A DNA stretch of 64,000 bases, taken from Camelus ferus. Its lineage: Eukaryota. Position 1 is the first letter of the stretch. Each line of letters opens with the position of its first letter. Under the pieces are notes generated by a model. The model saw only the letters and a list, made by a program, of their open reading frames with translations. It made no database searches and was not told the DNA's origin. Below are positions 18,001 to 62,664 of this stretch, in pieces. The stretch lies in the NCBI RefSeq assembly GCF_009834535.1, contig NC_045708.1:18972001-19036000 (forward strand). Reading direction: 5' to 3'. The translations under genes and the position numbers were made by a program.

Positions 18001-21000
18001 CAGCCTGGCTGGCAGAAGCACCTTGTTCATCTCTAGGACCAGCACCTGCAGATGATGGAGGAGAGGGGTTGGTCAGAAGCAGCCTGCCCCTCTCCCAGGT
18101 CCCATGCCCTACGGGCCTCACCAAGCACTGGTCTCCTTGGGGACAAGTGGTCTTGAGTGGCTGGCAGGACTGTAGCAAGAAGTGGAGCCAGAAGTGTGCA
18201 CAGTGTGGGGTTTCTCCAGGTGGCTCTAGCGTGGGTCTGAAGTGCTGGTACAGCAGGAAGGTTTCCATCACGGACACCAGGTACCTGCAGACACAGCTTT
18301 ATCCTCAGCTCAGCCCAGGCACCAGCTAGCACTGCCAGGGAGAGTAGACTGGCTTGGATGCAGCCAGAATGTGGGCATTGGGTGTCATGGGTGCTGGTCT
18401 GGAACAGGCTCAGGCTAGATGCCAGTGGACATGGGTGTAGAAGCTGACAGCCTAGGCCAGGCTAAGACTGCAGAAGGGGCCACCTACCATATCGGGGCAT
18501 TGAGCTTGTACAGCTGCTCTGCAGCCAGTGCCACCTGGGTGAGGTCATTGGCGAGGATTTGAGCTCCCAGGTAGAAGCCTACATCCCAGTAATACTGCAT
18601 CTTCTCCACACAGCCTTTTCGGGCCAGCAGACAGCCCAGCTTCATGCCTGAGAGAGAGGAGCCTGGGTCATAGTGGATGTTGTTGCAAGTTTGGGCAAAG
18701 CCCAGGTGTAGACCACAAAATTCATGTGCGCAGGAACATAGAAATGGGTGAAAACTTAGGTATGGCCAGATCTCAGGTGGGAGTAGGAGTTCAAGCACAG
18801 GTGAGGGTTAGGAAACAAGTGTATGTGGAATTCAGTGTGTAAGGAACAGAGGTGTGGGCTCAGTTGTGGGCTCAATGGCTCATGAGGGCCCTGGACTGGA
18901 CAGGTATGAGGACCTGGGTGTGGGTTCAGGCAGAACAGGTCCAAAAGGGGATGGATAGGGTCAGACCCAGCTCCAACCCAATGTCCTCTCTCCCTGCCCT
19001 CTCCCAAGGCCCCTCTGAGCCCCCGTGGGTTGGGGGTTAGGGGTGCAGGATTGTGGCTCACCTATAAGCCTGAGCTCCTTGGAGTCCTCAAAGCGCTGGC
19101 CGGCAGCAATGAGGAGCACAGCTGCATTGATGCCCGAGTGGAGGCTGGGCTCTACATCAAAAGCCTTGCGATACCTGGGGTGAGGGTTGGGGGACACAGG
19201 GCTGGACTGATGCCCACAGCCCCATCCCTCATCTCATTAGCACAACCCATGTGGGCCCCTTACCAGTGATATGCCTGCTCACGGTACTCAGCATCCTGGA
19301 AGCCAGAGCTGAAGAACATGTCCTTGTAGACACGGCCACACATGCAGTACAGGTCAGGTGCCACCAAGCCCTCAAACTGTACCAGTGGCAGTAGCACGGC
19401 CAGTGCCTTCTCACGGTCCCCAGGCCTGTTCCTCCTAGGGGAAGGGGAAGATAGGCTGGGGACCTGCCTGATGGCCCTGCCCTACTCTGTCCAGGAACCC
19501 CCAGACCCTGAACAGCAGGGACCCTTCCAAGGGTCTGACAGTCATGAACCCAGAAGAGCAGTGACTCTGGTCAGCACTGACCTTCCTAGAGGTAGTGACC
19601 CCAGATGGAAGTGGTTCCTAGCTGCAGTGACTCTGAGGAGCAGTGGAAAGCTGTGACCCCTCCAAGGGCAGTACCACTACCCCACCCCACCCTAGGCAGC
19701 AGGAACAGAAAGATAGGGACCATTTGACATCAATGTGACCCTGGTCAGCAAATTCCCTGTACAGCAGTGGTCCCAGATGGCAATGACCTCACACAGCAGA
19801 GACCCATGTCCGCATGTGGCTATGACCTGCGCCGTGCTCTGCCACCCACCGGTTGAGGGCAAATGTGTAGTGGAAGCAGACGTTGTGCTGCTCGGCCACA
19901 TCACAGGTGGGCAAGGCCTGCAGTGTCTCCACCAGCTCAATGATGGCCGAGTAGTCCTGCATGAGGGAAGAGCACACAGTGGCCTGATGGCCTCTGGTGA
20001 GTCCGATTGGCCCAAGACCCTGAGGAAAATCCTGATCTGGGGCCCCTTCCCACCCCTGACACCCCATTTTCCCACGCACCATCCTCTGCACACTTCCCTC
20101 AGGCCCAGTATGTAGTGTAGAAACCACACCTTACATAGAGAACATGCTGTGTGCCCCAATCTCCCAAATACCCTGGGAGACAGTGACATGATCATCCCCG
20201 AATATAAACAAGGAAACCGAGGCTCAGAGATGTCAGATTATTTGCTCAGAATCACCAGTGAGCCAGTTGTACAGCCAGGAGCTGAAATCCCATTTGTCTG
20301 ACACTGAATCCACTGTCCCGACTGCCAGCCTCTCTGAGCACCACACACCTGCACATCACGGTAGGAGAGCAGCAGGTTCATGATGATGTCGGGGGTCAGC
20401 AGCTCCACACTGTCCAGTCTCCGCTGCAGGCGAGCCAGCTCCTGCCGCAGCTGCTGTCCGCTGAACCGCTCCCTAGCCAGCCGGATGTCCTGCCGAATGG
20501 TCTCCCGGAAATAGCCACTAATGCACATAACAGGGGAGGGAGAGAGAGAATGGCAGGGCCTGTTTCTCAGCCCCAGCCCCCTGTACCCTCACCAGCCTCC
20601 TCCTGGTGCACCTTATATGGGGCCCCATTACCAAGAGTCCGTGGGCGTGGCCTCCAGCAGGCGGGCAAGCCGGCCCACCAGGGGTGTGAGCAGGGCCTCA
20701 GTGCCCACCCCAGCTGGTACTAGTCCATCAGCCAGGCCCCTCAGGAGGCCTGCATCACCACACAGCACCCGACCGGTGGCTGTAACCACATAGGGGATCA
20801 GCGTGTAGCTGCCAATGCAATCCTGGTGGGAGGGAGGCAGGCATCAGTAGAGGTCAGAGATCAGTACTAGGTTAGAAAGGGGCAGTGAGGGGGTCAGTGG
20901 TCAGCACCAGTAGGGACTGGAATAGCAGGGAAGGGGCACACTTCATAAAGGGAAGCAATAGGGAACAAAGGGTCTTATGGATGTCAGGGGGCATTAGGGA

Positions 21001-23017
21001 GGGCAGAGGGGACAGACGAGGCCAGGAAATGTAGTGGAGGTCAGAGGTCATAATGGAGGTCAAAGGACACACTGGAGTGAGGGATGGATTCTGCTCACCG
21101 AGTTCTTCTGGAAAATGTCCTCCTGCAGGGGACAGACATTCAGATACTGGTATTCTGGTTAAGGCCGCCCCAGCCCTTGGCCCACCACTACCAGCCCCCG
21201 GCCACCTACCCTCAGGGCCTGCAGGTCAGGGAGGTCTGCCTGGGAGCAGAGGAGCACGTTGTTGGTCATGCTGAAGCTCTCTCGCACGCCCAGGTGGTAG
21301 AAGAGGGAGGGCTGTGCCAGGGAGCTGCTCACCTCCAGCACCACCACATCTGAGGGCACACGGCAGGAGGCTCTGAGCCCTGAAGCCCAGCAGGGGGAGA
21401 AGGAGCCTGGGGACCCATCCTGGCTCAGCCTGCCTTCCCATGTGACTCCATCAGGGTCCAGTTTTGCTCTGGGCCTCAGTTTCCCCTTTTAGAGTCCCTC
21501 TGGCTCTTATACAGAAATTACATCTGTGGTATTGCAAGAAGAGGAGGGGAACTCACCTGACTACCATTCACACCCCACTGTTTAGAGCCTGGGGACACTG
21601 GACATGGAGAAGGAGAGGCTGTGCACCAGCCCACAGCCTGTTCCAAGCTATTCAAGAGGCAGGAGTTGTGCAGATGTCCTCTTCTCTGGATGCTCAACCC
21701 AAGTCTCTTGAAAGGGGCTGGCACCAGCAGTGTGCTGTGCGTATACACGTGTATACACACATGCCATGTGTGTACAATGCTGTGCCTGTGTGTGTGTCTG
21801 TATCTGTGTGATAGTGTCTGTGACAGCCTATGTGAGTCAACATATATGCGATTTGTGAGTCTATGACTGTGTGTGTGTGTTTGTGTCCTCAAGGTCGAAT
21901 CAGCCTTCATTTTTTGGGCTGAGATTTTATGCAAATACGTTTATTGGGCTCCTGGATGAAAAAAATAAATATCGGGGGCGGGGCATCCGGGTTGGTGGGA
22001 GGGCGGGGTGACCCGCTCGGAATAGCCGCCTTCTGGCCCCAGTACCTGACCGTCCGACTCAGCCTCCGGTCCCACCCAGCTCCACGCATTCTCTCGGAAC
22101 TATGGGAGCCTCATAACTTAAGCTCCCTCGCTTAGAATCCAGCGCAGTTGGGTCCCTCTGTTTCTCTTTCTGCCTCTTTAGCCTAATCTTCGGAAGCAGT
22201 ATGCTAGGAACCCTGAACTACAGCCCCGCAAGTGCGGCGCCATTCCCTAGTCCAAGTTCCAACTCCCAGGATCCTCCCTCATGAGCTCCGCGCGAGATCA
22301 TCCTGAGACTGAGTTCTTCAAACTCCACTCCTGATATACCACACCCTGTCCCGTTCCCAGCCTCTCCCCAGTCCTAGCCTCGCTCCCTAGGCACGGTGCC
22401 GACTCGAGAGCTTAAGCTCCAACCCTGAATCCCGAGCCGGGCCTGGATCCGCTAAATCCCTGCCCAAGCCTGGTCGCGCTCCAGATCCCCTAAACTTCCC
22501 TTTTATCACAGCCGCGCCTCGAGCCCCTCGTCTTTAGCTCACATTATGGTCCCATAGCCCGGGCACCCACCTCGGGGTCTCCCAGGAGTTGCCGAGACAC
22601 GCCCCCTTCGGGCCCTCCCCAGCCCCCCCCAGCCCCCTAAGCCCCGCCCCTGCCCCGCCCCCAAACATGCTCACCCGCGTTGTAGAAGGAATCCAGAGCC
22701 GCGGTGTCTCCCAGCGCTAGGGTCCCAAAAGGCAGGCTGCACAGCTGAGGCCGCGGCCGCGGTCCGGGTAGTTGCGCGCAGGCCTCACGCAGGCAGCGCA
22801 GGGGCAGCGGCTCTGCTTCGGCTCCCGGCTCGGGCTCCACCCCGGGCTGGGGCTCCCGGGTCAGCACGTAGACCACGCTGAGCGGCCGGCTTCGCGCGCA
22901 GCCCCGGCCGGGGGATGCAGCGAGCGGCCGGCCCCGGCTCAGCGCCTCGGCCAGCGGATCCTGCCAACAGCTGCCGGCGCGCTCCAGGGCTCCGGACTGC
23001 GGGCACGGCCCCGCCAT
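12050..23017 (-). CDS. MAP3K6: Mitogen-activated protein kinase kinase kinase 6 (ASK2); 29 coding exons, 1289 aa
   Basis: Exons on - strand: 22675-23017, 21210-21349, 21099-21122, 20632-20822, 20349-20517, 19850-19956, 19264-19434, 19062-19174, 18488-18647, 18122-18284, 17938-18045, 17768-17817, 17588-17683, 17364-17451, 17151-17284, 16628-16755, 16257-16393, 15826-15931, 15174-15331, 14878-15070, 14632-14770, 14189-14348, 13873-14049, 13506-13611, 13078-13243, 12879-12991, 12711-12784, 12355-12431, 12050-12128; total 3870 nt with no internal stop. Kinase motifs [40 protein letters not shown] (14-3-3-type site) and the C-terminal SAM-like region are all present. Confidence 0.96.
16900..17700. 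other. Intragenic CpG island at the start of the MAP3K6 kinase domain
   Basis: Dense CpG across exons 13-15; boundaries approximate. Confidence 0.65.
20190..20300 (-). mobile_element. MIR SINE in a MAP3K6 intron
   Basis: aaggaaaccgaggctcagagatgtcagattatttgctcagaatcacc...ggagctgaaatcc. Confidence 0.6.
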
Positions 23018-24819: not shown

Positions 24820-25669
24820 TTTAACATGTGGACAGGAGACTAACAGTGGTTAGCAATGGGGAGGGGTAGCCAAGGGTACGGAAGCTGTAGAGGAGAGATA
24901 AGGATGCTGGCTACCCGGGTGCCCTAGGGGAGGCATCATGTGAACCCTGCAGTAAGGGTGGCCTATTCCTTGGCCTGAGGCCCAGTTGATACCATAGTTG
25001 TGGGCGGTGGCTTTGGACATCCAGTAGATTGAACTGATAGCAGGATCCGCACCACCAGGCACCATGGATAGTCACCTCGCGGTTGCTCCTACTTGTATCC
25101 TGGCTGGCATCATAGGTGGTAAAGGGCCTCCCACCATGGAAGCTCAGGGAGTCCCCTGGCAGGAAGGGGATGAGAGGCACCAAGGTGCCAGCACCATGCC
25201 TGGCACCCTTGAAGAGATGATTTCACAGGAGCCTCAGAGAAGCTGTGAGGTGGATATTTTCAGGCCCCATGAGAAAACAGCAGAGCCAAGGAGCAAGGAT
25301 GTTTGCTCAAGCTCACTCACTAGTCACAGGGGTACTGGGACTTTGGCTCAGGACTGTGGCTCCAAAACCACTGGCTCTTACCCCTGCCTCGTCCCTTCCC
25401 AGAATCCCCAGCTTCCCTCTTGCTCCTCTGTCTCTTCCCTCATCAGCAGTTGGATCAACGCTGCCAGGAAGAGCTGGGAAGGACTTCTCAGATGGCTAGG
25501 CAGGAAAGGGGGCTCCCCTGGGGCACCTCCTCATAACCACTTCCCTCTTTCAGGTCTCTCAACAGTTGGTGTTTCTCTGAAAAAAGTCTTTCCTGGTTCC
25601 TCTTCCAAAGCAGATAGCGTTAACACTCACCAGAATCTCAAACGGCTCCCACAACCTCCCTCCCTGCCT

Positions 25670-25900
25670 CCTTACAGGTTTTATAGGGGAGGAAACTGAG
25701 GCTTTGACCCTGGAGGGACTTGCCCAAAGTCACAGAGTTAGTAAATGACAGAGCTGGATTTAAACTCAGGATTGTTGGCCTCCAGAGCCCAGCTTCTTCA
25801 CTCCTTCACTCCTTCACATCCCTGTCTGATGATTGCTGTTTTGCAGATGAGGAAACTGAGGCCCACAGAGGGGAAGGAAGTGCCCTGAGTCATTCCTGGA
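25670..25900 (-). mobile_element. Two adjacent MIR fragments
   Basis: gaggaaactgaggc occurs twice (about 25690 and 25850), with gacttgcccaaagtcacag and ggatttaaactcagg. Confidence 0.65.
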
Positions 25901-26466
25901 GGCCGTGGCAGCAATGGGAAAGGATCCAGCCTCCCTCACCTTCTTTTTCTACTTCAGGGCCACACCTTTAGCTCACTCACCTGCAGTGCCCTCTGAGAAC
26001 TTGCCCAGAACCAGCTGGTAGTGATCTGCCTCCCTGAGGAGACGGAAGGCCCCACAGTGAGCAAAAGTGCAGTTGCCTTTAAAGTCCTCCAGCTCCACCC
26101 ACAGCTCCCAGGTACTTGGGCAGACAGGGAAGAATCCTCAGGTCCTGGGTGGGGAGTCAGAATGCCAGAGGGATGCCCATCAGGCTCCCTGGACATCGAG
26201 AACCTACTCTGGAGAGTAAGCTGGTGCAACCTCTCATTCCCCAGCCAGAAATCAGAATACTGGCTCCCAAAACCTGATTTGTAGGAGGACAAAGAGTGGA
26301 AGAAATCCATGGAACCATCCTGTCACCTCTGGAACACCTAGGGAGGCAGAGAAGGCTAGCATAGCAGCCATTTCTCTAGGCTGAGCATGGGATGAGGAGA
26401 AGCAGGGGCAGTGGCAGCTGAGAAGTGGGTGTGCTGTGAGGGGTGGGTGGACATGTGCCCCTCTCT

Positions 26467-26571
26467 CTTTTTTTTAAATTAAAAAAAATTTTTAATGAAG
26501 GTACTCGGGATTGAACTTAGGACCTGGTCCATGCTAAGCATGCACTGTACCACTGAGCTATATCCACCCAC
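26467..26571 (-). mobile_element. tRNA-derived SINE, camelid Vic-1-like, short form, inside an FCN3 pseudogene intron
   Basis: A box TAGCTCAGTGG, B-box-like GTTCAATCC and A-rich tail; imperfect TSD catgtgc(a)ccctct at about 26452-26464 and 26572-26585. Confidence 0.85.
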
Positions 26572-26899
26572 CATGTGCACCCTCTTTGGATTGAGAGCTT
26601 GTTGATAAAGTGTGTGTCCAGGTGAGCCTTGCCTGTGACTATACTGATGAACTCTGCATGTCCTTATTAACTCTTACTGACATTCAACTTCACGCCGCAG
26701 CCTCGAAAGCCCTGGGAGGACTGAAATGGTAGAAATATTATCCCTGCCCTTAGGAGATGGTCAGTTTTTTTTTTGGGGGGGGGGGTCACATTCAAAATAA
26801 CATGCTTTAATTTTTTATGATAAAACCAAGATATTAGAGCAGAGAGGTCACCTCCAGAGGCCTTACCCTGATGCTCCCTCTGAACCCCACTTTCCTCTT

Positions 26900-27445
26900 C
26901 AGGCCAAGCAGTCCCCAGGCCCTGTAGAGTTTCTTTCCTAAATATCTTTCAGTCTAAGAGCCTCTACTTCCATTGCTGCCACTGCCCACCTGCTTGTTCT
27001 GGTCGGATCCCTACAGCCTTCTTAACTTGTGTCCCTAACTCCATTCTGGTCCCCACTGCAATACATCTCCCTTGGTGCAGCCTGAGTCTTCTTTCTAAAA
27101 CATAAGTCTGACCTGGTCCCTCCCTTGCTCAAAACTCTCCCATGGCTCCCTATTGCCCTCCATGCTCCTCAGTCAGCCATTCAGTGCTTGGCCCACACCG
27201 ATAGACCTCAGCCCACCACTCACACCTGCTCTCAGCTCATTCACACTGTCTCCCCACGCCTTCTTGTACTCTCCGGCCTCCCTGCATTTGTCTTTCCCTC
27301 TGCCTGAATGCCCTTCTGCACCTCATATGTCTTGAGAACTTCTACATAGTCTTCAAAGCCCTTTCAAATGGCATCTCTTCTATGAAGCTTTCCCAAACTT
27401 CTTCAGGTCCTCTGGGAGCTCAGTAATCATTTGTTAGTGAATTGT
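26900..27445 (+). mobile_element. L2 LINE fragment within the FCN3 pseudogene
   Basis: cagcctgagtcttctttctaaaacataagtctgacc...aaaactctcccatggctccctattgcc...tgcctgaatgccctt...catttgttagtgaat. Confidence 0.65.
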
Positions 27446-28299
27446 GTTAAAGAATGCCTTGGCTCCAGTAGGCTCTGGCTCCCCCTAGGGGCCAAGGGGA
27501 AGGCATGCCCACTGGGCCTGACCTGCAAGTCCCTTCTCTCTGGCACTCACCAGCCAGCCGTCCTCTGTGCTGTCCATGTGACAAAAGACAGGGATGGTCC
27601 CATCCTTGGGTAGGCACATGGTAGGTAGGTAGATGGTACCAGCTGCTCAATCCTGGCAGCTCCTGGGGCCTGGGGAAGGAGAGAGGGACTCAGGGGGGCC
27701 CTCAATTTACAGTTACTCCCCAACACAAACCCCAGGTAATGGAGTAGGCCAAGTGTGGGAACCCAGGAGTCCTCTTGACTCCTCTGGACCCCTTAGGATG
27801 GGTTTTGGGGCAGGCTGGGCCACGCCTGGTGGTCCACCAACACCCCAGCACCATCTGATTCCAAGTGCCTGGCTCCTCCAAAGGCAGCCTCACCCTCGTG
27901 GCGCTGGAGCAGTTTCCCTGGGTCTCCTGCCCCAGGCAAAGATGAATGCTGGCTCTGAGGTCTGAGTACCCCCAAGGGAATACCCATGACCCACCAGAGG
28001 GGAGAGCGGCTGGCCCTTCTTCTAATTCTCCCCACTGCTCCCAGCCTTCCATCCCCCGCTGCAATCATAGCCAACTCCTGAGCAGCAGCCAAGCAGAGAC
28101 ATCCCTCTCTCTAGTTCAGGGACCGAGCAAAGAAAGGAGAGGAGACTCCAGTCCCACACAGTCACCAGGCTCACCCTTGGGGCCCATCTTGCCCAGTGGT
28201 CCTGATTGCCCCGAAATCCCAGAGGCAGAGATGCCTTAAGTCCCATCCCATGTCTGGAGCCAAAAAAACAATGAGGGATTTGGAGCCAGAAGTCAAATC

Positions 28300-28455
28300 T
28301 CAGCTGCACCCTTTACTGGCTCTGTGAATAAGGGCAAATGACTCCTCTCTGAGCTTCAGTTTCTCTCTCAGCAAAATGGGGATGGTACCACTTACCTCAC
28401 AGGGTCAATCCTAGGATGCTGAGTGTCCAGCCTGGAGCCTGACACACAGTAGGTT
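28300..28455 (+). mobile_element. MIR SINE
   Basis: ctgtgaataagggcaaatgactcctctctgagcttcagtttctc...aaaatggggatggtacc...gcctgacacacagtagg. Confidence 0.65.
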
Positions 28456-29055
28456 CCTTGCCCCTTCGTCATGGCCTCTCAGCACAGACTGTGATTGCTG
28501 CATCCCCACCCTCCCCAGTTTACCCCAAGTTCCTGCCCCACCCGCTGGCTTTTCTCACCTTGAGGACCTGGAGCTCTCTATTCCCCAGAACTTCCTAGGG
28601 CACCAGGTAACTTAGCAGGAAGACAACCTGGCTGCCTTCCAGTTCCCTGGGTTCTGCAGGGAGACATGGGCTGGGTGGGCATGGGGGGAGTACGCATGTC
28701 TCCCACAGACCCCGCTGCATTTCTCATTCCCTCTCCCAGATCCTAGCTGGCAGGACACTTGCCTCCAGAGCTGACAAGGGTTTTCACCATTTGCATCTAT
28801 TTGCATACATTTTTGTGCAGAACTCAGATTATCAAACCCCACCCCGCTCCTTGAAGCTAGTGAGCCTGGGTGAGAGAAGGATACCCAGGGAGGGAATGAG
28901 GGTGGGTTAGTGGGGAGGGCATCCTAGGCCCCTTCCTGGGCAGCTGGAGTGGTCCTGGGTCCTCAGACAGGCAGGGTCTCCAACAAGAGGAACAAAAGGG
29001 AGAGTGAGGGTCACACTGGTCCCATCTTGCTGGGGCCCCTTAGGGAGGGTGCCAG

Positions 29056-32177: not shown

Positions 32178-36400
<4,223 letters not shown>

Positions 36401-42899: not shown

Positions 42900-43892
42900 A
42901 TGATGCGGGGTGCAGGCAGCCCCCTGGCCTGGCTCTCTGCTGGCCCAGGCAACATGAACATGAGCAGCGTGGGCTCAACAGAGAGGCCCACAGACCCAGA
43001 TGCACCACTGCCCTCACCTAGCGCCTGGGATGTAGTGCTGTGCATCTCGGGTACCCTTGTGTCCTGTGAGAACGCACTGGTGGTGGCCATCATTGTGGGC
43101 ACTCCTGCCTTCCGTGCCCCCATGTTCCTACTAGTCGGCAGCCTGGCCGTGGCAGACCTGCTGGCAGGATTGGGCCTGGTCATGCACTTTGCTGCTGTCT
43201 TCTGCATTGGCTCAGTGGAGATGAAGCTGGTGCTGGTTGGCGTGCTGGCGATGGCCTTTACTGCCAGCGTAGGCAGCCTACTGGCCATCACTGTCGATCG
43301 CTATCTTTCTCTGTACAATGCCCTCACCTACTACTCAGAGACAACAGTGATGCGGACCTATGTGATGCTGGCCCTGGTGTGGGGGGGCGCGCTGGGCCTG
43401 GGGCTGCTGCCTGCGCTGGCCTGGAACTGCCTGGATGCCCAGACCACGTGTGGCATTGTATATCCACTCTCCAAGAACCATCTGGTGGTCCTGGCCGTTG
43501 CCTTCTTCATGGTGTTTGGCATCATGCTGCAGCTCTATGCCCAGATCTGTCGCATCGTATGCCGCCACGCCCAGCAAATTGCCCTCCAGCGGCACCTGCT
43601 GCCTGCTTCCCACTACGTGGCCACCCGAAAGGGCATCGCCACCCTGGCCGTGGTGCTTGGGGCCTTTGCCGCCTGCTGGCTGCCCTTCACTGTCTACTGC
43701 CTGTTGGGCGATGCCCACTCCCCGCTCCTCTACACCTATGTCACCCTGCTCCCTGCCACCTACAACTCCATGATCAACCCCATCATCTACGCCTTCCGCA
43801 ACCAGGATGTGCAGAAGGTGTTGTGGGCTGTCTGCTGCTGCTGTTCTTCTTCCAAGATCTCATTCCGATCCCGTTCCCCTAGTGATGTCTAG
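42900..43892 (+). CDS. GPR3: G protein-coupled receptor 3 (constitutively active Gs-coupled class A GPCR), 330 aa, single coding exon
   Basis: Intact ORF with 7 hydrophobic segments, GTLVSCENALVV, LAVADLL, DRY, CWLP and NPIIY; ends FRSRSPSDV*. Splice acceptor cag|gtaccATG at 42894/42895. Confidence 0.98.
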   Translation: MMRGAGSPLAWLSAGPGNMNMSSVGSTERPTDPDAPLPSPSAWDVVLCISGTLVSCENALVVAIIVGTPAFRAPMFLLVGSLAVADLLAGLGLVMHFAAVFCIGSVEMKLVLVGVLAMAFTASVGSLLAITVDRYLSLYNALTYYSETTVMRTYVMLALVWGGALGLGLLPALAWNCLDAQTTCGIVYPLSKNHLVVLAVAFFMVFGIMLQLYAQICRIVCRHAQQIALQRHLLPASHYVATRKGIATLAVVLGAFAACWLPFTVYCLLGDAHSPLLYTYVTLLPATYNSMINPIIYAFRNQDVQKVLWAVCCCCSSSKISFRSRSPSDV

Positions 43893-53116: not shown

Positions 53117-53292
53117 NNNNNNNNNNNNNNNNNNNNNNNNNNNNNNNNNNNNNNNNNNNNNNNNNNNNNNNNNNNNNNNNNNNNNNNNNNNNNNNNNNNN
53201 NNNNNNNNNNNNNNNNNNNNNNNNNNNNNNNNNNNNNNNNNNNNNNNNNNNNNNNNNNNNNNNNNNNNNNNNNNNNNNNNNNNNNNNNNNNN
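53117..53292. other. Assembly gap (176 N) in the WASF2 3' UTR
   Basis: Run of n. Confidence 1.
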
Positions 53293-62464: not shown

Positions 62465-62664
62465 NNNNNNNNNNNNNNNNNNNNNNNNNNNNNNNNNNNN
62501 NNNNNNNNNNNNNNNNNNNNNNNNNNNNNNNNNNNNNNNNNNNNNNNNNNNNNNNNNNNNNNNNNNNNNNNNNNNNNNNNNNNNNNNNNNNNNNNNNNNN
62601 NNNNNNNNNNNNNNNNNNNNNNNNNNNNNNNNNNNNNNNNNNNNNNNNNNNNNNNNNNNNNNNN
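62465..62664. other. Assembly gap (200 N) within WASF2, probably hiding a coding exon
   Basis: Run of n; see findings. Confidence 1.

What the first reader, a model, noticed from the sequence alone, without database searches (positions are those of the whole stretch)
24924..29025. FCN3 (ficolin-3) is a multiply disabled unitary pseudogene in this probably camelid genome
Seen in the sequence, compared with human FCN3 from memory. Exon 1: W5 is TGA (29011-29013), the exon is 90 nt rather than 91 (-1), and the donor is GA not GT (28934-28935). Exon 2: 95 nt rather than 96 (-1), with TAG at 28595-28597 and 28578-28580. Exon 3: acceptor GG not AG (28211-28212). Exon 4: intact. Exon 5: about -22/+13 indels, with TGA at 27647-27649. 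Exon 6: VFQR*QDG, TGA at 26323-26325. Exon 7: acceptor AA not AG (26116-26117). Exon 8: about 11-nt deletion near 25025, Cys to Arg at 25079-25081, YDAD to YDAS in the Ca-binding loop, and a +1 shift that moves the stop out of frame. Ficolin-3 is the main lectin-pathway ficolin in human serum and is known to be a pseudogene in mouse and rat. So many independent lesions imply an old loss, probably separate from the rodent one, and a complement lectin pathway that runs without H-ficolin.
Basis: partly seen in the sequence, partly recalled or inferred. Interest (0 to 1): 0.72.

Follow-up and report, generated by a model that had tools for sequence, protein, structure and literature searches.

The report
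Dead ficolin-3 gene in camels
The camel's copy of FCN3, the gene for the blood lectin ficolin-3 that starts one arm of the complement system in people, is a long-dead gene sitting in its normal chromosomal place; deer, a whale, a cat and a bat have also lost it, so this is an ordinary example of a gene that mammals lose repeatedly.

Summary
The window is Camelus ferus chromosome CM020780.1 (100% identical over about 20.8 kb). On the minus strand, between CD164L2 and MAP3K6, lies an intron-containing FCN3 orthologue with the canonical eight exons. It carries 12 independent disabling lesions: 3 splice-site mutations, 6 indels and 3 nonsense codons in the ancestral frame. There are also 2 stops in shifted or restored frames. 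All 12 are identical in an independent Camelus dromedarius assembly, so assembly error is very unlikely. Horse and a vesper bat keep an intact gene at the same place. Along the whole camel branch, codon positions 1+2 changed as fast as introns (ratio 1.05, bootstrap 0.77-1.39; bat 0.22, horse 0.45). The gene has therefore drifted neutrally since about the base of the camelid lineage.

The loss is not special to camelids. Red deer, fin whale, Iriomote cat and a bat contig also carry dead FCN3 genes, each with its own lesions. Black rhinoceros has one nonsense codon. The only lesion camels share with deer and whale is CGA>TGA at codon 136. That is a CpG hotspot also hit in the rhino and the bat, so a single loss in the artiodactyl ancestor is likely but unproven.

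It is a new member of a known kind, of modest interest.

The parts
24924..29025 (-). FCN3 (ficolin-3) unitary pseudogene. It has eight exon remnants with introns retained, and runs from the old ATG to the old stop codon.
   Evidence: PDB phmmer gives ficolin-3 as the best match. Pfam Fibrinogen_C hits. Exon map against the intact bat gene.
28936..29025 (-). Exon 1 remnant (90 nt instead of 91). ATG is at 29025-29023. Codon 5 is TGA at 29013-29011. A 1-nt deletion lies between 28984 and 28983. The donor is GT>GA at 28935-28934.
28559..28653 (-). Exon 2 remnant (95 nt instead of 96; collagen-like region). A 1-nt deletion lies between 28608 and 28607. The frameshift produces TAG at 28597-28595. 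Codon 56 is TAG at 28580-28578 in the ancestral frame.
28166..28210 (-). Exon 3 remnant (45 nt, reading GKMGPKGEPG). The acceptor is AG>GG at 28212-28211.
27894..27926 (-). Exon 4 remnant (33 nt). Frame and splice sites are intact. In C. ferus only, Cys86>Arg is at 27903-27901; the dromedary keeps TGC.
27551..27669 (-). Exon 5 remnant (119 nt instead of 128). A 22-nt deletion lies between 27651 and 27650. A 13-nt insertion lies at 27631-27619. TGA at 27649-27647 sits next to the deletion junction, in the reading frame.
26208..26337 (-). Exon 6 remnant (130 nt). Codon 136 is CGA>TGA at 26325-26323. The same change is seen in deer, fin whale, black rhinoceros and a bat contig.
25981..26115 (-). 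Exon 7 remnant (135 nt, open). The acceptor is AG>AA at 26117-26116. The polypyrimidine tract upstream is shortened.
24924..25155 (-). Exon 8 remnant (232 nt instead of 242). YDAD has become YDAS. Cys245>Arg is at 25081-25079. An 11-nt deletion lies between 25028 and 25027. A 1-nt insertion at 24933 puts the old TAG (24926-24924) out of frame.
32736..35427 (-). CD164L2, the conserved upstream neighbour. The last coding exon ends at 32736. The large MGC-24 exon lies within 35131-35427.
   Evidence: ORF translations. Gene tables for L002 and L003 list PF05283. CD164L2 homologues. Mapping to the window.
19973..22870 (-). 5' part of MAP3K6, the conserved downstream neighbour. The dromedary model's start maps to 22870. 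The gene continues below 19973.
   Evidence: L003 gene table mapped to the window. The same neighbour follows FCN3 in rhinoceros, bat and cat.
42900..43892 (+). GPR3, a single-exon gene of 330 codons. It was used to identify the genome.

Best explanation
This is the camel orthologue of FCN3, dead in place. It keeps the ancestral eight-exon, intron-containing layout between CD164L2 and MAP3K6, but it can no longer yield a ficolin-3 protein:
- The signal-peptide exon has a stop at codon 5, a frameshift and a dead donor.
- Two further splice sites are lost.
- Five further indels lie in exons 2, 5 and 8: three shift the frame, and the exon 5 pair cancels in length but leaves a stop at its junction.
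- Two further nonsense codons lie in the ancestral frame.
- Two structural cysteines and a probable calcium-ligand aspartate of the fibrinogen-like domain are replaced.

Shown here: the lesions are fixed in two Camelus species. The coding sequence has changed at the neutral (intron) rate along the entire branch leading to camels. Inactivation therefore dates to about the base of the camelid lineage or earlier, which is tens of millions of years ago.

Inferred, at about 55%: the gene was already disabled in the common ancestor of living artiodactyls, perhaps by the CGA>TGA change at codon 136. Camels, ruminants and whales would then have each added their own private lesions.

Consequence, inferred and not tested: camels make no H-ficolin. 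Lectin-pathway recognition must rest on MBL, collectins and the FCN1/FCN2-type ficolins.
For: Identity of the gene:
- Exon 6, 7 and 8 pieces hit PDB ficolin-3 at E = 1.9e-14, 4.3e-18 and 7.5e-16. The next family scores 1.3e-10, 2.9e-07 and 6.1e-09.
- Pfam Fibrinogen_C hits.

Orthologous place:
- The order CD164L2 - FCN3 - MAP3K6 is found in camel, rhinoceros, bat and cat.
- Exon sizes and phases match the intact bat gene.

Lesions:
- There are 12 independent lesions at exact coordinates.
- The C. dromedarius assembly GCA_000803125.3 is an independent assembly. It is 99.5% identical over 13.6 kb and carries the identical 12 lesions.
- Horse has no lesion and the bat serves as the intact reference.

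No intact camelid copy is on record:
- The 120 best ficolin-3-like clusters include no camelid.
- The only camel entry is an 86-aa model stitched from exon 5 and 7 remnants.
- One C. ferus annotation even runs a gene model from CD164L2 to MAP3K6 across the locus, with no fibrinogen domain.

Neutral evolution:
- Exon/intron branch-length ratio is 1.17 for camel, against 0.49 for bat and 0.59 for horse.
- Codon positions 1+2 over intron give 1.05 (bootstrap 0.77-1.39) for camel, 0.22 (0.13-0.36) for bat and 0.45 (0.17-0.74) for horse.
- Pairwise dN/dS is 0.65-0.68 among camel, deer and whale, against 0.17-0.26 among bat, horse and rhinoceros.

For the older, shared loss:
- Deer and fin whale orthologues are also dead.
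- Their branches are also neutral over their whole length (1.04 and 1.66).
- TGA at codon 136 is common to all three lineages.
- A 2025 review lists pig ficolin-3 as a pseudogene.
Against: - No whole-genome search for a second FCN3 copy in camels could be run.
- Raw reads were not examined.
- No Lamini genome (alpaca, llama) could be fetched, so none of the 12 lesions is dated by sharing beyond the genus Camelus.

Against the single artiodactyl-stem loss:
- Not one indel or splice lesion is shared between camel, deer and whale.
- The one shared lesion is a CpG transition that arose independently in black rhinoceros and in a bat.
- The stem-branch ratio is uninformative (0.73, bootstrap 0.26-1.42).
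- Codon changes shared by camel with deer or whale look only partly relaxed, with 11 nonsynonymous to 10 synonymous against a neutral expectation of about 3:1.
- The review's sources for pig are general ficolin papers.
Confidence: 0.92

Rival explanations
1. The loss is camelid-specific. FCN3 was still working in the artiodactyl ancestor and was disabled independently, soon after the basal splits, in the camelid, ruminant and cetacean lineages. The shared TGA at codon 136 would then be three parallel CpG hits.
For: All indels and splice lesions are private to each lineage. TGA136 demonstrably recurs: it is present in black rhinoceros, whose sister lineage horse keeps CGA, and in a bat contig that groups with Eptesicus, which also keeps CGA. 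Shared derived codons show a nonsynonymous:synonymous ratio of about 1.1, below the lineage-specific 1.9-2.3. The Cetruminantia stem ratio is low, at 0.47 (few changes).
Against: It needs three or four independent losses, each at the very start of its branch, because camel, deer and whale branches are all neutral along their full length. A single loss shortly before the rapid basal radiation predicts about one shared lesion, and one is seen.
Confidence: 0.4
2. The lesions are assembly or sequencing errors, or a rare null haplotype, and camels have a working FCN3 at this locus.
For: Only assemblies were examined, not reads.
Against: Twelve lesions of different kinds are identical in two species assembled independently. 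Substitution rates are neutral over tens of millions of years. Annotation pipelines produced no full-length model in C. ferus or C. dromedarius.
Confidence: 0.01
3. This is one of two copies. An intact FCN3 paralogue elsewhere in the camel genome carries the function, so the loss is not unitary.
For: The rest of the genome could not be searched with these tools.
Against: The dead copy sits at the ancestral syntenic place with its introns. No camelid ficolin-3 of normal length appears among the best 120 clusters, out of 817 hits, in a 5.8-billion-protein collection that holds RefSeq and UniRef. FCN3 is single-copy at this place in every other species fetched.
Confidence: 0.03
4. The locus still does something: a truncated peptide, a non-coding RNA, or a regulatory element for MAP3K6 or CD164L2.
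For: Exons 4, 6 and 7 are still recognisable. The locus lies 2 kb upstream of MAP3K6.
Against: Exons evolve no more slowly than introns. There is no Rfam match. Plus-strand ORFs have no family. The start region is hit three times.
Confidence: 0.04

Closest known systems
Mouse and rat Fcn3 (H-ficolin) pseudogene (Endo et al. 2004, Genomics 84:737, as cited in PMC3364236 and PMC3240626)
   Same: The same gene has become an intron-containing unitary pseudogene with several stop codons at the orthologous place. The animals rely on the ficolin-A/B (FCN1-type) genes and MBL.
   Different: It is an independent event in a different superorder. Other rodents (Dipodomys, Heterocephalus, Fukomys, Jaculus) and the Laurasiatherian outgroups horse and bats keep annotated FCN3. 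The lesions differ.
Human and primate FCN3 (ficolin-3, H-ficolin, Hakata antigen; PDB 2J5Z/2J60/2J64)
   Same: It is the orthologue. The eight-exon layout and the neighbours are the same. Across the exon 6-8 pieces aligned to the crystallised fibrinogen-like domain, about 70-80% of residues are identical.
   Different: The primate gene is intact and highly conserved, and is reported as the most potent human lectin-pathway initiator (PMC3240626, PMC3078537). The camel gene cannot encode a protein.
FCN3 remnants in red deer/wapiti, fin whale, Iriomote cat and a bat, and the single-nonsense allele in black rhinoceros
   Same: They have the same locus and the same fate. Codon 136 is CGA>TGA in deer, whale, rhinoceros and the bat contig.
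   Different: All other lesions are lineage-specific. Deer has a 559-nt insertion in exon 5 and three splice mutations. Whale has lost the start codon and has three frameshifts. Cat has two Trp>stop changes and keeps Arg136. Rhinoceros has nothing else broken.
Pig and rabbit 'ficolin-3 pseudogene' as stated in a 2025 review (PMC12165806)
   Same: If correct, another artiodactyl suborder lacks FCN3. That fits an order-wide loss.
   Different: The review cites only general ficolin papers. No pig sequence could be fetched here, so this was not verified.

Membership tests
FCN3 (ficolin-3 / H-ficolin) orthologue | Sequence is closer to ficolin-3 than to ficolin-1, ficolin-2 or other fibrinogen-related proteins. 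| tested here: met
   In PDB phmmer, ficolin-3 ranks first for three exon pieces, by 4 to 11 orders of magnitude. In the representative search, the best full-length relatives are ficolin-3 proteins.
FCN3 (ficolin-3 / H-ficolin) orthologue | Conserved position between CD164L2 and MAP3K6, on the same strand as both. | tested here: met
   Gene tables and mapping. The same order holds in rhinoceros, bat and cat loci.
FCN3 (ficolin-3 / H-ficolin) orthologue | Eight coding exons with ancestral sizes and phases: signal peptide, collagen-like Gly-X-Y exons, then fibrinogen-like domain. | tested here: met
   The bat reference is 91/96/45/33/128/130/135/242 nt. The camel remnants are 90/95/45/33/119/130/135/232 nt, aligned exon for exon. 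Fibrinogen_C hits for exons 6-8. Gly-X-Y remnants in exons 2-3.
Unitary pseudogene | The open reading frame and/or splicing is disabled. | tested here: met
   Three splice-site losses, six indels and three ancestral-frame stops.
Unitary pseudogene | Not a processed or duplicated copy: introns are retained and the locus is orthologous. | tested here: met
   All seven introns align to those of horse, rhinoceros and bat. The alignment has 2268 ungapped intron columns.
Unitary pseudogene | No functional copy elsewhere in the same genome. | tested here: inconclusive
   No camelid ficolin-3 of normal length appears in the protein collections. A whole-genome nucleotide search was not possible.
Unitary pseudogene | A functional orthologue exists in related species. 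| tested here: met
   Horse and Eptesicus loci have no lesion and evolve under constraint. Many annotated mammalian ficolin-3 proteins exist.
Unitary pseudogene | Lesions are real and fixed, not artefacts or rare alleles. | tested here: met
   An identical lesion set is found in an independent assembly of a second species. Reads and population data were not examined.
Order-wide (stem Artiodactyla) gene loss | At least one inactivating mutation is shared by all major artiodactyl lineages and is unlikely to be convergent. | tested here: inconclusive
   Only TGA136 is shared by camel, deer and whale, and it is a recurrent CpG hit. Suina, hippopotamus and Lamini were not available.
Order-wide (stem Artiodactyla) gene loss | Relaxed constraint is already present on the stem branch. 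| tested here: inconclusive
   The stem ratio is 0.73 with a bootstrap range of 0.26-1.42. Shared derived codons give N:S of about 1.1.

The most novel reading that the evidence does not exclude
FCN3 was knocked out once, in the last common ancestor of living artiodactyls, by the CGA>TGA change at codon 136. Every camel, pig, ruminant, hippopotamus and whale would then lack H-ficolin. The same CpG codon would also be a recurrent 'weak point', taking the gene out independently in black rhinoceros and in at least one bat lineage. Together with the separate losses in cats and murid rodents, this would make the most abundant human lectin-pathway recogniser one of the most frequently discarded innate-immune genes in placental mammals.
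Probability: 0.5. Interest if true: 0.5.

Novelty: new member of a known kind. Interest (0 to 1): 0.35.

Why it matters
Ficolin-3 is reported as the most potent initiator of the human lectin pathway (PMC3078537). Even so, only the mouse and rat pseudogene is documented in primary work found in the searched library. A recent review of camelid immunity says that careful studies of camel complement are lacking (PMC13343275).

Three practical points follow:
- Camels are natural FCN3 nulls. This matters for reading camel complement assays.
- It also matters for using camelids, and livestock generally, as models of lectin-pathway biology.
- Fragmentary or mislabelled database entries need correcting. 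Examples are an 86-aa 'Ficolin-3' in dromedary, a 341-aa model with no domain in deer, and 'tenascin isoform X1' in a cat.

The wider pattern seen here is repeated loss across Laurasiatheria, with a shared CpG nonsense hotspot. It argues that FCN3 is dispensable or redundant with MBL, collectins and FCN1-type ficolins in many mammals. That fits the existence of human FCN3-deficient individuals (my own knowledge, not checked here).

Tried and rejected
- Alpaca or llama locus. No handle was found. The CD164L2 search returned no lamine protein. A search with a camel pseudogene ORF returned one weak, unrelated hit. GPR3 lies 14 kb away, beyond the 10-kb flank limit.
- Pig locus. The warthog CD164L2 isoform and protein P0003 are not on record as gene products.
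- Horse isoform X2 also failed. Isoform X3 worked.
I used branch lengths of codon partitions against introns, pairwise Nei-Gojobori distances and plain site-pattern counts instead.
- Strict 'all outgroups versus all artiodactyls' codon patterns gave only 4 codons, too few to decide.
- Plus-strand ORFs and a 120-aa minus-strand ORF inside the locus have no Pfam family.
- There is no Rfam family and no tRNA in 24-30 kb.
- Earlier notes of this scan hold nothing on ficolins in this genome.
- Literature searches for FCN3 loss in camelids, ruminants, cetaceans or in gene-loss screens found nothing specific.


Full report
WHAT THE WINDOW IS. The single-exon GPR3 ORF at 42900-43892 is encoded identically on two Camelus ferus assemblies. 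Locus L002, from GCA_009834535.1 chromosome CM020780.1, is 100% identical to the window over about 20.8 kb. The two N runs (53117-53292 and 62465-62664) lie far from the finding and were left alone.

IS IT FCN3? Against all PDB chains, the exon 7 piece matches ficolin-3 at E = 4.3e-18, with ficolin-2 next at 2.9e-07. The exon 6 piece after the stop matches at 1.9e-14, with ficolin-1 next at 1.3e-10. The first part of exon 8 matches at 7.5e-16, with tenascin-R next at 6.1e-09. All three pieces hit Pfam Fibrinogen_C.

The locus lies between CD164L2 and MAP3K6, all on the minus strand. The last coding exon of CD164L2 ends at 32736. The MAP3K6 model starts at 22870. The same order is seen around FCN3 in black rhinoceros, Eptesicus and a cat. 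This is the orthologue at its ancestral place, with all introns retained. It is not a processed or dispersed copy.

THE LESIONS. I mapped the intact 299-codon Eptesicus fuscus protein (P0042) onto its own gene. This gave eight exons of 91, 96, 45, 33, 128, 130, 135 and 242 nt with GT-AG introns. I then aligned eight genomic loci and read the camel against the bat, exon by exon. The result:
- Exon 1: TGA at codon 5 (29013-29011), a 1-nt deletion (28984/28983), and donor GA (28935-28934).
- Exon 2: a 1-nt deletion (28608/28607) that brings TAG 28597-28595 into frame, and TAG at codon 56 in the ancestral frame (28580-28578).
- Exon 3: acceptor GG (28212-28211).
- Exon 4: frame and splice sites intact.
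- Exon 5: a 22-nt deletion (27651/27650) and a 13-nt insertion (27631-27619). Together they restore the frame but leave TGA 27649-27647 next to the deletion junction.
- Exon 6: CGA>TGA at codon 136 (26325-26323).
- Exon 7: acceptor AA (26117-26116), with a shortened pyrimidine tract.
- Exon 8: Asp>Ser in the YDAD motif, Cys245>Arg (25081-25079), an 11-nt deletion (25028/25027), and a 1-nt insertion (24933) that puts the old TAG out of frame.

That makes 12 independent disabling lesions: 3 at splice sites, 6 indels and 3 ancestral-frame stops. The only omission is a C. ferus-specific Cys86>Arg in exon 4 (27903-27901).

I infer two functional readings from the general fibrinogen-related-domain fold, and did not test them. 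The mutated Asp would be a calcium ligand. Cys245 would be half of the conserved disulphide next to the calcium site.

NOT AN ARTEFACT. The representative search returned an 86-aa protein 100% identical to the exon 7 piece. It is GenBank KAB1268361.1, 'Ficolin-3 [Camelus dromedarius]', a model stitched from the tail of exon 5 and exon 7. Its locus L003, from GCA_000803125.3, is 99.46% identical to the window over 13.6 kb. Inside the aligned FCN3 locus (about 4.35 kb, slightly beyond the gene at both ends) it differs at only 16 of 4354 aligned positions. It carries exactly the same 12 lesions. Two species, assembled independently, share every lesion. The lesions were therefore fixed before the two Camelus species diverged, and assembly error is very unlikely.

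IS IT UNITARY? A search with the fibrinogen domain of a bat ficolin-3 listed annotated ficolin-3 proteins from many groups: bats, horse, rhinoceros, primates, xenarthrans, shrews, hedgehog, several non-murid rodents, marsupials, reptiles and amphibians. None of normal length came from any camelid, ruminant or pig. One C. ferus annotation runs a single 1348-aa model from CD164L2 to MAP3K6 straight across the locus, without a fibrinogen domain. This supports a unitary loss. I could not search whole camel genomes, so a second copy is not formally excluded. I put that at about 3%.

HOW OLD? With the topology fixed and confirmed on introns, I estimated branch lengths separately for 839 ungapped exon columns and 2268 intron columns. 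The exon/intron ratios are:
- bat 0.49
- horse 0.59
- perissodactyl stem 0.21
- camel branch 1.17
- deer 1.04
- fin whale 1.57
- artiodactyl stem 0.99

Using only codon positions 1+2 (273 codons), the ratios with 100 bootstraps are:
- bat 0.22 (0.13-0.36)
- horse 0.45 (0.17-0.74)
- rhinoceros 0.61 (0.29-0.95)
- camel 1.05 (0.77-1.39)
- deer 1.04 (0.71-1.47)
- whale 1.66 (1.13-2.26)
- artiodactyl stem 0.73 (0.26-1.42)

Pairwise dN/dS is 0.17-0.26 among bat, horse and rhinoceros, and 0.65-0.68 among camel, deer and whale. So the camel sequence has drifted at the neutral rate for essentially the whole branch, from the split with other artiodactyls to the Camelus ancestor. 'An old loss' is well supported. 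Even at the lower bootstrap bound, well over half of that branch was neutral.

NOT ONLY CAMELS. The neighbouring-gene route brought in red deer and wapiti loci. The whale and cat loci came from fragmentary gene models. Findings by species:
- Deer has three splice mutations, a 559-nt insertion in exon 5, four frameshifting deletions, one in-frame 9-nt deletion and three stops. Its 341-aa gene model has no Pfam domain.
- Fin whale has GTG for the start codon, three frameshifts and TGA136.
- Iriomote cat has two Trp>stop codons and no detectable exon 4, and keeps Arg136.
- A 4.3-kb Logan contig (ERR3348237, L004) groups with Eptesicus at 100% bootstrap, so it comes from a bat. It has two stops, frameshifts and lost splice sites.
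- Black rhinoceros has a single lesion, TGA136, which its gene model simply skips.

Horse and Eptesicus read CGA at codon 136. TGA136 is therefore a CpG transition that has happened at least three times. It is the only inactivating change that camel shares with deer and whale.

ONE LOSS OR SEVERAL IN ARTIODACTYLS? Evidence for one loss on the stem:
- All three sampled suborders are dead.
- All three crown branches are neutral from their base.
- All three carry TGA136.
- A review lists pig ficolin-3 as a pseudogene (PMC12165806), though its sources are general.
- A loss shortly before the rapid basal radiation would leave time for about one shared lesion, which is what is seen.

Evidence against:
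- No indel or splice lesion is shared.
- TGA136 is convergence-prone.
- The stem ratio is uninformative.
- Codons where camel shares a derived state with deer or whale show 11 nonsynonymous to 10 synonymous changes, against a neutral expectation of about 3:1 and lineage-specific values of 1.9-2.3:1.

I put a single stem loss at about 55%, and independent early losses at about 40%.

LITERATURE. In the searched library, the primary record of an FCN3 pseudogene concerns mouse and rat (Endo et al. 2004, cited in PMC3364236 and PMC3240626). One 2025 review adds rabbit and pig. A 2026 review of camelid immunity never mentions ficolins or the lectin pathway, and states that careful studies of camel complement are lacking (PMC13343275). 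Searches aimed at gene-loss screens, cetaceans, ruminants and cattle found nothing on FCN3. Genome-wide orthology catalogues very probably already flag the gene as lost in these species, but I could not check them.

MEANING. Shown here: the camel cannot make ficolin-3 from this locus, and has not been able to for tens of millions of years. Inferred: lectin-pathway recognition in camels rests on MBL, collectins and FCN1/FCN2-type ficolins. None of these was examined. The finding is sound but ordinary. It is another lineage in which a known dispensable innate-immune gene has decayed. The modest added value is the picture of repeated loss across Laurasiatheria and the CpG hotspot at codon 136.

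Noticed in passing
L007:4621-4623 (Diceros bicornis minor, GCA_013634535.1): Black rhinoceros FCN3 is intact except for the same CGA>TGA nonsense at codon 136. The deposited 293-aa model (P0045) skips the six codons around it. The rhinoceros branch shows partly relaxed constraint: positions 1+2 over intron give 0.61, against 0.45 in horse.
   Followed up: partly
L005:16946-21768 and L006:16951-21792 (Cervus, GCA_019320065.1 and GCA_910594005.1): The gene called downstream of CD164L2 (341 aa, no Pfam hit) is a dead FCN3. It has a 559-nt insertion in exon 5 flanked by a duplicated GTCTTTTGTGAC, three splice-site mutations, four frameshifting deletions, one in-frame 9-nt deletion, and stops at codons 115, 136 and 295.
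   Followed up: partly
L008:3001-6834 and about 400 nt upstream (Balaenoptera physalus): Fin whale FCN3 has GTG in place of ATG, 4-nt and 1-nt deletions in exon 1, a 1-nt insertion in exon 7, and TGA136. The deposited partial model (P0096) and the Phocoena Ensembl model (P0095) both step around the stop.
   Followed up: partly
L011:4215-8235 (Prionailurus iriomotensis): Felid FCN3 is also broken. It has Trp>stop in exon 6 and in exon 8, and exon 4 was not found. It is annotated as two fragments, one named 'tenascin isoform X1'. Arg136 is intact, so this is a separate loss.
   Followed up: partly
L004:941-3885 (Logan run ERR3348237, 4.3-kb contig): An unidentified mammal that groups with Eptesicus (100% bootstrap), so a bat. 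Its FCN3 has stops at codons 99 and 136, frameshifts in exons 2 and 5, and lost exon 5 splice sites. Several bats in the protein list are flagged 'LOW QUALITY PROTEIN: ficolin-3'.
   Followed up: partly
window 27901-27903: C. ferus has CGC (Arg) where C. dromedarius keeps TGC (Cys86). It is one of only 16 differences between the two species in the aligned 4.35-kb FCN3 locus, and shows that decay is continuing.
   Followed up: yes
window 26480-26575 (intron 5, minus strand): A stretch that looks tRNA-derived (it begins like GGATATAGCTCAGTGG and ends in an A/T-rich tail), probably a SINE. ARAGORN calls no tRNA there and Rfam gives no hit.
   Followed up: partly
L001:1-2058 (C. ferus GCA_000311805.2): The older assembly's annotation fuses CD164L2 and MAP3K6 into one 1348-aa product that spans the dead FCN3. 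This is an annotation artefact worth flagging.
   Followed up: no
L009 exon 6 donor (Equus caballus): In the alignment, the horse FCN3 exon 6 donor reads GC rather than GT (a GC-AG intron). This is probably why a strict GT-AG mapper failed on the horse gene.
   Followed up: no
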